A stretch of DNA of 63,736 bases, filler included, from Octopus bimaculoides (lineage: Eukaryota), in the NCBI RefSeq assembly GCF_001194135.2. It is 9 parts of 9 records of this genome, joined end to end, with 100 filler letters (N's around TTAATTAATTAA, not from the genome) between each part and the next. Parts side by side here need not be neighbours in the genome. Positions count along the whole stretch, not along the records: positions 56,226 to 60,205 come from NC_068983.1; 8 more parts are not named here. One strand, given 5' to 3'. Below, piece after piece: positions 56,582 to 59,490 of this stretch (positions within the stretch are counted from its first letter, which is position 1; each line of letters starts with the position of its first letter). The notes under the pieces were generated by a model that saw only the letters and a program-made list of their open reading frames with translations, was not told the origin of the DNA and made no database searches. The position numbers were made by a program, and so were the translations under genes.

Positions 56582-56957
56582 CTGAAGTTCGATCTAGTTT
56601 CAAAACAAAGAAAAAAATAAATATATAAATAAATAAAAGTGATGAAGTTAGCATAAAATTCCCTAGGGATTTCTGAAGGCAAGTTGCGTCAAAACACAAA
56701 AAAGTAAGTGACAATAACAACAGTAACAGCAACAATAACAACAACAAAACCAGCATGTATGGTTAATTGTGAATATATAGCATTACTTGAATTATTGAAG
56801 ACAGCTCCCACCCAGTTTCTGCCTGTCAATACTTCTCTCCATCTTTTAGTACCACTCCCAAATTCTTTGTAATTGGTGTTGCTAAAGACTTAAAATATGG
56901 TTGAATAGATTCGATCGTTTGACCCCAGTCTAAAAATAAAGCCCCTTCAGAATTCTT
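56582..56957. repeat. Direct repeat copy 1 (376 bp); copy 2 at 59123-59490 (368 bp)
   Basis: Collinear copies differing by about a dozen substitutions and one 8-bp indel. Confidence 0.95.
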
Positions 56958-58980
56958 CTAACCCTAACCCTAACCCTAACCCTAACCCTAACACTAACCC
57001 TAACCTTAACCATAACCCTAACCTTAACCCTAACTTCTAAGCCTAACCTAACCCTAACCCTCAAACTAACCCTAACCCTAACCCAAACCCTAACCCTAAC
57101 TTCTAACCCTAACCCTAACCTTAAACCTAACCCTAACATCTAACCCTAACCCTAACACTAACCCTAACCCTAAACCTAACTTCTAACCCTAACCCTAACC
57201 CTAGCCCTAACCCTAACCCTAAACCTAAATTCTAACCCTAACCCTAACCCTAACCCTAACATCTAACCCTAACCCTAACCCTAACCCTAACCCTAACCCT
57301 AATTTCTTACCCTAACCCTAACCCGAACTCTTAACTCTAAAGCTAACCCTAAACCTAAAACTAACACTAACCCTAACCCTAACACTAACCCTATACTAAC
57401 CCTAATCCAAACCCTAACTCTAACCTTAACCCTAACCCTAAATTCTAACTCTGACCCTAAACCTAACCCTAAACCTAACCCTAGCACTAAGCATAACCCT
57501 AAAACTAACCCTAACACTAACCCTAAACCTAACCGTAACCATAACCCTAACCCGAACCCTAAACCTAAACCTAACTTCTAAACCTAACCCTAACCCTAAC
57601 CCTAACATCTAACCCTAACCCTAACACTAACCCTAACCCTAAACCTAACTCTAACACTAACTTCTAACCCTAACCCTAGTCCTAACCCTAACCCTAAACC
57701 TAACTTCTAACCCTAACCTTAAACCTAACCCTAACACTAACCCTAACACTAACTTCTAACCCAAACCTTAACGCTAACCCTTACCCTCACCCTATCCCTG
57801 ACCCTAACCCTAAATTCTAACCCTAACCCTAACCCTACCCCTAACACTAACCGTAACCCTAACTTCTAACCCTAACCCTAACCCTAGCTTCTAACCCTAA
57901 CCCTAACACTAACCCTAACCCTAACTTCTAACCACAACCCTAACCTTAACACTAACCCTAACACTAACCCTAAACCTAACCCTAGCCCTAACTACTTACC
58001 CTAACCCTAACACTAACCCTAAACCTTACTCTAACCCTAACCCTAACAGTAACCTTAACCCTAACCCTAAACTAACCCTAACCCTCACCCTAACCCTAAC
58101 CGTAACCCTAACCCTAACTTCTAAACCTAACCCTAACCCTAACCCTAAACCTAACCCTAACCCTAACCCTAACCCTAACTTCTAACCCTAACCCTAACCT
58201 TAACCCTAACTCTAACCCTAACTTCTAAACCAAACCCTAACCCTAACACTAACCCAAACCCTAACTTCTAACCCTAACCCTAACCCTAACACTAACCCTA
58301 ACCCTAACCCTAACCCTAACTCAAACCCTAACCCTAAACCTAACCCTAACTTATAACCCAAAACCTAACCCTAACCCTAACCCTAACCCTAACCCTAACT
58401 TATATCCCAAACCCTAACACTAAAAGTAAACCTAGCCCTAACCCTAACCCTAACCCTAACTTCTAACCCTAAGCCTAACTTCTAACACTAACCCTAAGCC
58501 TAACACTAAACCTAACACTAACCTTAAAACTAAACATACCCTAAACCTAACCCTAATCCTAACACTAACCCTAACCCTAACCCTAACACCAACCCTTACC
58601 CTAACTTCTAACCCTAACTCTAAACCTAACCCTAACCTTAAGTTCAAACCCTAACCCAAATTTAAACCTAACCCTAACTTCTAATTCTAACCCTAACCCT
58701 AACCCTAACCTTAACCCTAACTTCTAACACTAACCCTAACCCTAACCCTAACTTCTAACTCTTACCCTAACACTAACCTTAACCCTAACCCTAACTCTAA
58801 CCCTAACCCTAACTTCTAACCCTAACCCTAACCCTAACCCTAAAACTAACCCTGACCCTAACCATAACCCTAACCTCTAACCCTAACCTTAATCCTAACC
58901 CTAACCCTCACCCTATCCCTGACCCTAACCCTAACTTCTAACCCTAACCCTAACTTCTAACCCTAACCCTAACCCTAACC
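56958..58980 (-). repeat. Degenerate telomere-type array (TTAGGG)n on the minus strand, ~2.0 kb
   Basis: CCCTAA units interspersed with CTTCTAA, CACTAA, CCTAAA, CCTTAA and CCGTAA variants. Confidence 0.97.
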
Positions 58981-59122
58981 AAAATGCCCGGGAACAGGGG
59001 GTGCAGCGGGTGCACCTGCACCCCCTAGAATTTTCAGGGGGTGCAAGATCAAAATTTGCACCCCCTACATAATCTTCCCAGTTGCAGAAAAAAAAGTGTC
59101 TAAAATCTATCGGTATAAAATA

Positions 59123-59490
59123 CTGAAGTTCGATCTCGTTTCAAAACAAAGAAAAAAATAAATATATAAATAAATAAAAGTGATGAAGCTAGCATAAAAT
59201 TCCCTAGGGAGTTCTTAAGGCAAGTAGCGTCAAAACACAAAATAGTAAGTGACAATAACAACAGTAGCAGTAACAATAACAACAACAAAACCAGCATGTA
59301 TGGTTAATTTTGAATATATAGCATTACTTGAATTATTGAAGACAGCTCCCACCCAGTTTCTGCCTGTCAATACTTCTCTCCATCTTTTAGTACCACTCCC
59401 AAATTCTTTGTAATTGGTGTTGCTAAAGACTTAAAATATGGTTGAATGGATTCGACCCCAGTCTAAAAATAAAGCCCCTTCAGAATTCTT
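59123..59490. repeat. Direct repeat copy 2
   Basis: See 56582-56957; continues into non-telomeric sequence at 59491. Confidence 0.95.

What the first reader, a model, noticed from the sequence alone, without database searches (positions are those of the whole stretch)
56582..59490. 2-kb telomere-like array enclosed by ~370-bp direct repeats
Seen, in a gap-free 4-kb contig: [A 376 bp]-(CCCTAA-variant)n 2023 bp-[142-bp hairpin cassette]-[A' 368 bp]-unique continuation. Copy 1 stops exactly where the array starts (GAATTCTT|CTAACCC, with CTT shared with the CTTCTAA variant), while copy 2 continues. The copies differ by about 12 substitutions and an 8-bp indel, so a collapsed assembly is unlikely. 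The orientation makes the array a 'left telomere' for the cassette side. Inference, three models: (a) a break healed by telomerase and later re-ligated with duplication; (b) a telomere-capped extrachromosomal fragment integrated with a very long target duplication; (c) a tandem unit of a TE or subtelomeric repeat carrying a telomeric core. TTAGGG is the ancestral metazoan telomere repeat (established).
Basis: partly seen in the sequence, partly recalled or inferred. Interest (0 to 1): 0.7.

Follow-up and report, generated by a model that had tools for sequence, protein, structure and literature searches.

The report
Telomere-like array inside tandem duplication
A 2-kb stretch of decayed telomere-type repeats sits between two head-to-tail copies of the same DNA segment in what is probably a mollusc-like animal genome; this looks like an ordinary duplication that carried an old internal telomere-like satellite with it, not a freshly healed chromosome break.

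Summary

Three things change the reading.
- The left edge of copy 1 is the 3' tail of an endonuclease/reverse-transcriptase LINE. So 376 bp is only the visible part of copy 1, and the repeated unit was probably longer.
- The array is not fresh telomerase product. It is 11.8% away from perfect CCCTAA along its whole length, against 2.7% between A and A'. Only about half its units are canonical. One 7-mer variant, CTTCTAA, recurs 23 times at quasi-regular 43/49-bp spacing.
- The cassette is transposon-derived. About 80 nt match the 5' end of a roughly 290-bp hAT-like MITE family with a 16-bp TIR and 8-bp target duplications.

Best model (confidence about 0.45): an older telomere-like satellite next to a transposon remnant was duplicated head-to-tail together with A. 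The join was made through CTT microhomology into a CTTCTAA unit, and a LINE inserted into copy 1 later.

Telomerase healing, independent transposon copies and misassembly are not excluded. No sequence from the source species could be retrieved. Interest is low to moderate.

The parts
56227..56451 (+). C-terminal end of a non-LTR retrotransposon (LINE) ORF2, cut by the piece's left edge
   Evidence: The 74-aa tail has 733 relatives at E<=1e-3. The best, P0001 (984 aa, 62% identity, matching at its C-terminus), carries Exo_endo_phos and RVT_1. P0003 (60% identity) is an Octopus vulgaris protein.
56452..56581 (+). LINE 3' UTR ending in an (AATA)n(TA)n tail; marks the left limit of visible A/A' homology
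   Evidence: TRF finds AATA x8 at 56548-56579. Homology with copy 2 starts at 56582.
56582..56957 (.). Direct repeat copy 1 (A), 376 bp, non-coding
   Evidence: No ORF above 105 aa. No protein relatives.
56955..56957 (.). CTT shared between the end of A and the first array unit read as the CTTCTAA variant (candidate microhomology joint)
   Evidence: Sequence GAATTCTT|CTAACCC. CTTCTAA is the commonest variant, 23 of 292 units.
56958..58980 (+). Degenerate telomere-like satellite, C-strand (CCCTAA) orientation on the + strand, 2023 bp
   Evidence: TRF. Unit census. 238 edits, or 11.8%, from a perfect array, spread evenly. Autocorrelation at lags 43 and 49 exceeds all 1000 unit shuffles.
58981..59122 (+). 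Cassette: remnant of the 5' end of a hAT-like MITE-type transposon, with two stem-loops built from GGGTGCA motifs, followed by about 32 bp of AT-rich spacer
   Evidence: Fold z = -4.85. Five GGGGGTGCA-type motifs lie here and one 1-mismatch match lies elsewhere in the piece. 32-33 of 34 nt, loop included, are identical to the MITE termini, and about 80 nt are alignable.
58996..59026 (.). Stem-loop 1 (AGGGGGTGCA GCGGGTGCACC TGCACCCCCT)
59036..59066 (.). Stem-loop 2 (AGGGGGTGCA AGATCAAAATT TGCACCCCCT)
59123..59490 (.). Direct repeat copy 2 (A'), 368 bp, continuous with the unique DNA to its right
59491..60205 (.). Unique AT-rich non-coding continuation (U)
   Evidence: No repeats shared with the rest of the piece. 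No ORF over 50 aa. No protein relatives.

Best explanation
This is an interstitial, degenerate telomere-like satellite lying inside a head-to-tail segmental duplication. Proposed history: (1) The ancestral locus read (CCCTAA-like array)-[transposon remnant = cassette]-A-U. The array was already old and was evolving as a satellite by unequal exchange or slippage, which spread the CTTCTAA, CACTAA and ACCTAA variants. (2) A tandem duplication of [part of the array + cassette + A] joined the end of A (..GAATTCTT) to a CTTCTAA unit of the array through CTT microhomology. That gave [..cassette-A]-array-[cassette-A']-U. The same event repeated would give a yeast Y'-like or human subtelomere-like tandem family. 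(3) A LINE later inserted into copy 1 at the AT-rich site TATAAAATA|CTGAAG. Only the 376 bp to its right are therefore still visibly homologous within this piece. Shown directly: the anatomy, the LINE identity, the degeneracy and variant structure of the array, and the transposon origin of the cassette. Inferred: the order of events, the extension of copy 1 beyond the LINE, and the microhomology mechanism. No cellular function is implied; it is a structural fossil.
For: The left edge of copy 1 is exactly the LINE tail. A later insertion explains this without any coincidence. The site in copy 2 (GGTATAAAATA|CTGAAG) is the kind of A/T-rich target that endonuclease-type LINEs use (established knowledge). 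The array is 11.8% from perfect repeats, evenly along its length, against 2.7% between A and A'. So the array is older than the duplication or has a satellite mode of evolution. The 7-mer CTTCTAA needs at least two changes from CCCTAA yet occurs 23 times, quasi-periodically. Lags 43 and 49 give z = 4.4 and 3.8, above all 1000 shuffles. The A|array joint can be read as A overlapping a CTTCTAA unit by CTT. It cannot be a telomerase priming site, because the C-strand follows a + strand 3' end. All units point one way, as in subtelomeric ITSs and unlike fusion ITSs (classes as reviewed in PMC6410037).
Against: The sequence upstream of the LINE lies outside the piece, so the predicted second cassette and array are unseen. 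No sequence of the source species could be retrieved. Copy number, chromosomal position and empty alleles are therefore unknown. CTT is only 3 nt; the first unit would be CTTCTAA by chance about 8% of the time. Exact long duplications inside the array are not significant, so the case for a higher-order structure rests on the autocorrelation alone. Gene conversion between A and A' could make them look younger than they are: 9 of the 10 differences lie in the first 190 bp.
Confidence: 0.45

Rival explanations
1. Chromosome break healed by telomerase. A double-strand break at or next to the transposon terminus, for example from one-ended hAT transposase cleavage, exposed the minus-strand 3' end ..CATTTTGG. 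Telomerase extended it. The capped end was later joined to a DNA end terminating in A, producing the duplication.
For: Only the cassette side has the polarity that telomerase needs. The terminal GG is in register with the first TTAGGG. The array ends 0-3 nt from where the transposon terminus is predicted by comparison with the MITE family, in which 13 nt precede the hairpin. There is no 8-bp target duplication around the cassette. Telomerase-mediated ITS insertion at breaks, sometimes with target duplication, is documented in mammals (PMC2246262).
Against: The array is 11.8% degenerate with no proximal-distal gradient. It has recurrent quasi-periodic complex variants. It is about four times more diverged than A is from A'. 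Documented repair ITSs are short and near-perfect when young. Two nt of register is weak, with a chance of about 1/16. The model also needs the LINE tail to coincide with the duplication boundary by chance. It could still describe the much older origin of the array/cassette junction.
Confidence: 0.15
2. A, with or without the cassette and U, is part of a dispersed multi-copy transposon. The two copies are then independent insertions or remnants flanking an ordinary telomere-like satellite.
For: The cassette is the 5' end of a transposon, oriented so that its interior points into A'. A and U are non-coding and AT-rich. The 2.7% divergence is typical of copies within a transposon family.
Against: A shows no similarity to the MITE family beyond the cassette. 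No second terminus or further GGGGGTGCA motifs occur in the 1.08 kb to the right of the cassette. DNA transposons do not insert as truncated copies ending at GAATTCTT. None of about 30 family loci carries two or more tandem CCCTAA units. Translations of A and U match nothing among 5.8 billion proteins, which include spurious ORFs from eukaryotic contigs. This last point is weak negative evidence.
Confidence: 0.15
3. Assembly artefact: a chimeric or mis-joined contig in a repeat-rich (sub)telomeric region.
For: A 2-kb low-complexity array is hard to assemble. The piece is a short 4-kb contig of unknown technology. Palindromic artefacts at contig ends were seen in the related metagenome loci.
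Against: The two copies differ at 10 sites and by an indel, so this is not a collapse. The array has enough variants to be spanned by accurate long reads. The junctions are clean.
Confidence: 0.1
4. Minus-strand retroelement reading: [U-A'-cassette](TTAGGG)n followed by a 5'-truncated second copy starting at A. That is, head-to-tail copies of a LINE/SINE/Penelope-like element with 3' stem-loops and a telomere-type tail or target (TRAS/SART-, HeT-A- or Athena-like).
For: On the minus strand the stem-loops sit immediately 5' of (TTAGGG)n, as in stringent-type LINE/SINE 3' ends. The downstream copy begins abruptly, like a 5' truncation.
Against: There is no RT or other long ORF. There is no hammerhead or other Rfam match and no tRNA head. 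In relatives the stem-loop belongs to a TIR/TSD DNA transposon. A 2-kb degenerate tail is unlike retroelement tails.
Confidence: 0.05

Closest known systems
Subtelomeric ITSs and tandem subtelomeric elements (human (TTAGGG)n-like islands between duplicated subtelomeric blocks; yeast Y'-TG1-3-Y' arrays)
   Same: Degenerate telomere-type repeats, all in the telomere's own orientation, lie between head-to-tail copies of non-telomeric DNA (classes as reviewed in PMC6410037; yeast Y' from general knowledge).
   Different: Chromosomal position is unknown here. Only two partial copies are visible. The 2-kb array, with a 43/49-bp quasi-period, is longer and more satellite-like than yeast internal tracts.
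Short ITSs inserted by telomerase during double-strand-break repair (Nergadze et al., PMC2246262)
   Same: Telomeric repeats lie inside unique DNA. A minority of such events carry a target-site duplication. [quoted passage not shown]
   Different: Those ITSs are a few to about 25 units long and near-perfect when young, and their duplications are short. Here there are about 330 units, 11.8% diverged, and at least 368 bp of flanking repeat.
Heterochromatic ITSs / telomere-derived satellites
   Same: Telomere-like units amplified by unequal exchange or slippage, with spread of variants (PMC6410037).
   Different: Those are typically tens of kb to Mb and pericentromeric. This one is 2 kb.
hAT-superfamily MITEs
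   Same: The cassette shares about 80 nt, including a 31-nt stem-loop with its loop, with the 5' end of a 275-296-bp family. That family has the 16-bp TIR CATAGGCGTAGCCAGG and 8-bp TSDs.
   Different: In the window the 13-nt outer TIR differs (AATGCCCGGGAAC). No matching 3' end or TSD is present. The family was not tied to a transposase, so the hAT assignment rests only on TSD length and a CA-start TIR.
Telomere-associated retroelements (Penelope-like Athena/Coprina; TRAS/SART; HeT-A/TART)
   Same: Non-telomeric units alternate with telomere repeats in a fixed orientation.
   Different: No RT, no ribozyme and no poly(A) or defined tail. The only retroelement present, the LINE at the left, points away from the array and simply interrupts copy 1.

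Membership tests
Interstitial telomeric sequence, degenerate/subtelomeric type | Head-to-tail array of exact and degenerate TTAGGG units in one orientation | tested here: met
   TRF period 6, 332 copies, one strand. 142 of 292 units canonical.
Interstitial telomeric sequence, degenerate/subtelomeric type | Non-telomeric DNA on both sides | tested here: met
   A on the left, cassette and A' on the right.
Interstitial telomeric sequence, degenerate/subtelomeric type | Location in a subtelomere | not testable with these tools
   The source genome could not be found.
Telomerase-mediated repair ITS (short ITS) | Short, near-perfect run of hexamers | tested here: not met
   2023 bp, 11.8% diverged.
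Telomerase-mediated repair ITS (short ITS) | 3' end of the break in register with the repeats | tested here: inconclusive
   Only GG is in register at ..CATTTTGG|TTAGGG.
Telomerase-mediated repair ITS (short ITS) | Empty orthologous site | not testable with these tools
   No related genomes are available.
Fusion ITS | Head-to-head (TTAGGG)n/(CCCTAA)n | tested here: not met
   A single orientation throughout.
hAT-like MITE (cassette) | Terminal inverted repeats | tested here: inconclusive
   The family has a 16-bp perfect TIR. In the window there is only a weak pairing, about 9 of 13, between 58985-58995 and 59074-59087.
hAT-like MITE (cassette) | 8-bp target-site duplication | tested here: not met
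   Met in L012, L028, L003 and L017. No matching 8-mers flank the window cassette.
hAT-like MITE (cassette) | Sequence homology to family termini | tested here: met
   32-33 of 34 nt including the loop, and about 80 nt alignable.
LTR retrotransposon / TRIM (A as LTR) | TG..CA LTR ends, PBS after the 5' LTR, PPT before the 3' LTR, and homology ending at the LTR edge | tested here: not met
   A ends in ..TTCTT. Copy 1 is followed by CTAACC, not a PBS. The left flank of copy 1 is a LINE tail.
APE-type non-LTR retrotransposon (left flank) | ORF2 C-terminus homologous to proteins carrying endonuclease and RT domains; 3' UTR with a simple-repeat tail | tested here: met
Penelope-like element | Hammerhead ribozyme in the pLTR; RT/GIY-YIG ORF | tested here: not met
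   No Rfam hit at E<=10 apart from two weak unrelated ones. No ORF.
Helitron/Helentron | 3' hairpin with a CTRR end and no TSD | tested here: not met
   Relatives have symmetric TIRs and 8-bp TSDs.

The most novel reading that the evidence does not exclude
The array/cassette junction is a fossil of a McClintock-type event. A hAT-family transposon end was cut by transposase. The exposed 3'-OH at the transposon terminus was extended by telomerase into a new telomere. That capped end was later internalised and duplicated. This would link transposase-induced chromosome breakage, telomere healing and the birth of an interstitial telomere-like satellite in an invertebrate.
Probability: 0.1. Interest if true: 0.6.

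Novelty: new member of a known kind. Interest (0 to 1): 0.25.

Why it matters
If the main reading is right, this is one more example, in a poorly studied and probably molluscan genome, of how internal telomere-like satellites travel with segmental duplications and are then broken up by transposons. That is useful for annotation and for interpreting telomere-motif hits in assemblies, but it is not surprising. It would matter more if the array could be shown to start exactly at a transposase-cut transposon end (see the novel case), or if the unit turned out to be a repeated subtelomeric element comparable to yeast Y'.

Tried and rejected
- **Finding the source or other copies.** An exact 31-mer of A found nothing in metagenome, prokaryote-genome or viral contigs.
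- **ORF look-ups.** Five exact ORF look-ups were not on record.
- **Word-indexed protein searches.** Searches with the LINE tail, with concatenated translations of A and U, and with translations of the cassette all found nothing.
- **RNA families.** Rfam at E<=10 gave only two sub-threshold chance hits (RT-17, URE2 IRES). There was no hammerhead, telomerase RNA or SINE/LINE 3' element, and no tRNA.
- **LTR/TRIM reading of A.** Rejected: wrong termini and no PBS or PPT.
- **LINE 3'-transduction or chimeric-retrocopy origin of A.** Rejected. There is no tail or poly(A) at either A end. It would need a 5' truncation exactly at the LINE end. The TATAAAA box is only 4-10 nt from the start of A'.
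- **Telomerase-RNA-derived cassette (as in rodent TERC-ITS loci).** Rejected, because in relatives the cassette motif belongs to a TIR/TSD element.
- **Complete mini-MITE reading of the cassette.** Not supported: the TIR is weak and there is no TSD.
- **Long exact internal duplications in the array.** Not significant: 33 of 200 shuffles do as well.
- **Long-lag autocorrelation peaks (475-1121 bp).** Not used, because they were picked after the fact.
- **Proximal-distal degeneracy gradient.** A first semi-global alignment suggested one. This was an alignment artefact, and wrap-around alignment shows none.
- **Literature search for the terminal motifs.** Nothing relevant.

Full report
**The observation**

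I read the piece 56226-60205 directly. Its layout is:
- the 3' end of a LINE (56226-56581);
- A (56582-56957, 376 bp);
- a CCCTAA-type array (56958-58980, 2023 bp; TRF period 6, 332 copies, 78% matches, score 2308);
- a 142-bp cassette (58981-59122);
- A' (59123-59490, 368 bp);
- 715 bp of AT-rich unique DNA, called U here.

A and A' differ by 10 substitutions and one 8-bp indel, giving p = 0.027. Copy 1 ends GAATTCTT|CTAACCC, and copy 2 continues GAATTCTT|TCAATAC.

**The left edge of copy 1**

Frame +2 of the first 225 bases is the C-terminal tail of a non-LTR retrotransposon ORF2. A HMMER scan of 1.84 billion representatives found 733 relatives. The best is a 984-aa protein that matches at its extreme C-terminus and carries Exo_endo_phos and RVT_1 domains. 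One 60%-identical relative is annotated from Octopus vulgaris, so a mollusc-like host is plausible but not shown.

The ORF stops at 56451. It is followed by a 130-bp UTR ending in (AATA)8(TA)n at 56548-56580. Homology between A and A' begins at the very next base. The corresponding point in copy 2 is GGTATAAAATA|CTGAAG, an A/T-rich site of the kind such LINEs nick.

The economical reading is that a LINE inserted into copy 1 after the duplication. The rest of copy 1 would then lie upstream of the LINE, outside the piece. So 376 bp is a lower bound for the repeat, and the repeated unit may include the cassette and more.

**The array**

I parsed it on TAA.
- 142 of 292 units are CCCTAA.
- The main variants are CTTCTAA (23), CACTAA (23), ACCTAA (21) and CCTTAA (13).

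A wrap-around alignment to perfect (CTAACC)n needs 238 edits, or 11.8%, spread evenly at 23-40 per 250 bp. An earlier semi-global alignment hinted at a gradient, but that was an artefact.

The 7-mer units are quasi-periodic. Autocorrelation at lags 43 and 49 is 0.63 and 0.62, against 0.53 for shuffled unit order. These values give z = 4.4 and 3.8 and exceed all 1000 shuffles. Longer exact internal duplications are not significant.

A variant that needs two changes from CCCTAA and recurs 23 times at regular spacing cannot be 23 independent mutations. It spread by amplification inside the array. The array is also about four times more diverged from its consensus than A is from A'. Both points argue that it is not a telomerase product made at the time of the duplication. 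Either it pre-existed as a telomere-like satellite, or it grew from a small variant-bearing seed.

**Polarity**

The + strand carries the C-strand. Telomerase can only extend a 3' end with TTAGGG, so the only possible priming end is the minus-strand end ..CATTTTGG at the cassette side, where 2 nt are in register. The A|array junction must be a ligation or recombination joint. It can be read as A overlapping a CTTCTAA unit by CTT (56955-57). That fits microhomology-mediated joining of the end of A to an array that already contained that variant. Alternatively, the variant may have been born at the joint and then amplified.

**The cassette**

It holds two stem-loops with identical 10-nt arms and 11-nt loops, at 58996-59026 and 59036-59066. 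The fold has z = -4.85. In effect it is five GGGTGCA motifs, three direct and two inverted.

About 30 of them are AT-moderate eukaryote-like contigs from a few host-associated or marine data sets. These share 32-33 of 34 nt with stem-loop 1, loop included. The rest are unrelated bacterial repeats with other loops.

In the eukaryote-like loci the stem-loop sits 13 nt inside the end of a 275-296-bp element. That element has the perfect 16-bp terminal inverted repeat CATAGGCGTAGCCAGG and 8-bp target-site duplications:
- L012: CTCGATAT
- L028: GCATTGTC
- L003: GGTCCCGG
- L017: AGTCTTGA

It also carries extra subterminal TGCACCCCC motifs, which makes it a hAT-like MITE. A second subfamily starts CAGTGGCGGATCC.

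The window cassette aligns to the first 115 bp or so of these elements (stem-loop, TTTTCAGG, GTGCAAG..TGCACCCCCTA). It has a different outer 13 nt, no convincing mate TIR and no TSD. It is thus a transposon 5'-end remnant.

Its predicted terminus lies 0-3 nt from the end of the array. None of the family loci contains two or more tandem CCCTAA units, so telomere repeats are not a family feature.

**Other checks**

- Rfam found nothing credible, and there are no tRNAs.
- No ORF in A, the cassette or U exceeds 105 aa.
- Translations of A, U and the cassette have no relatives.
- No DNA or protein of the source species could be retrieved.
- Copy number, location and empty alleles therefore remain untested.

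**Synthesis**

The best-supported history has three steps.
1. An old degenerate telomere-like array lay next to a transposon remnant, followed by A-U.
2. A head-to-tail duplication of [array part + cassette + A] was joined through CTT.
3. A LINE inserted into copy 1.

This is the arrangement known from subtelomeric ITSs between duplicated blocks, and from yeast Y' tandems (PMC6410037; Y' from general knowledge).

Telomerase healing, as proposed for short mammalian ITSs (PMC2246262), fits the polarity and the closeness of the array to a transposon terminus. It does not fit the size, degeneracy or variant structure of the array. It could still describe the much older origin of the array/cassette junction.

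Independent transposon copies, a minus-strand retroelement and misassembly remain possible at lower probability. An LTR/TRIM reading, LINE 3' transduction and a telomerase-RNA origin for the cassette were rejected on structure.

**Verdict**

The feature is real and was correctly described. The explanation is most likely ordinary: a segmental duplication carrying a telomere-like satellite, later hit by transposons. Interest is about 0.25. The novel reading, a transposase-cut transposon end healed by telomerase, has a probability of about 0.1.

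Noticed in passing
window 56227-56581: 3' end of an APE/RT-type LINE. The ORF2 tail reads ..GPQLFNALPKHLRDMQDMDAEVFKTKLDTFLSTVPDEP.., followed by a 130-bp UTR and an (AATA)n(TA)n tail. It has 733 relatives; one at 60% identity is from Octopus vulgaris, which hints at a mollusc-like source.
   Followed up: partly
L012, L028, L003, L017, L040, L041, L103, L116, L095, L009 and about 20 more loci: An apparently undescribed hAT-like MITE family, about 275-296 bp, found in host-associated and marine metagenome contigs. 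It has the TIR CATAGGCGTAGCCAGG, 8-bp TSDs, a conserved 31-nt subterminal stem-loop and repeated TGCACCCCC motifs. A second subfamily starts CAGTGGCGGATCC (L114, L111, L090, L021, L078, L015). No transposase partner was found.
   Followed up: partly
L008, L036, L038, L039, L051, L063, L069, L074 and others: An unrelated, highly conserved bacterial repeat, largely from human-gut metagenome contigs where the source is named, uses the same 10-nt stem with the loop GTAGTTTTCGGAAA. It is flanked by GGGGGTGCATTTTCGGCGCAAA and CTGTGGGAAAATTTCTCATGAC.
   Followed up: no
L057, L108, L016, L065, L119 (contig ends): The MITE terminus is extended into a long perfect palindrome (..GGCGTAGCC-hairpin-GGCTACGCC..) only at contig ends. 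This is probably an assembler artefact.
   Followed up: partly
window 56935-56940 and 59468-59473; 59114-59120: An AATAAA lies 17 nt before the shared end of A and A'. A perfect TATAAAA lies 4-10 nt before the start of A'. Both are probably chance in 33% GC DNA. They prompted a retrocopy model, which was rejected.
   Followed up: yes
window 56582-56957 vs 59123-59490: The differences are unevenly spread. Nine of the 10 substitutions lie in the first 190 bp (binomial P about 0.03), followed by a 137-bp identical run (P about 0.10). This could reflect partial gene conversion or constraint.
   Followed up: partly
window 56913-56920: An 8-bp indel (GATCGTTT, extra in copy 1). Its length equals a hAT target duplication, so it could be an excision footprint, but the sequence evidence is not convincing.
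   Followed up: no
window 56603-56637 and 59144-59178: An (AAAT)n microsatellite inside A resembles the LINE's own tail: the repeat finder family D4 shows 86% identity. LINEs with microsatellite tails often target similar sequence.
   Followed up: no
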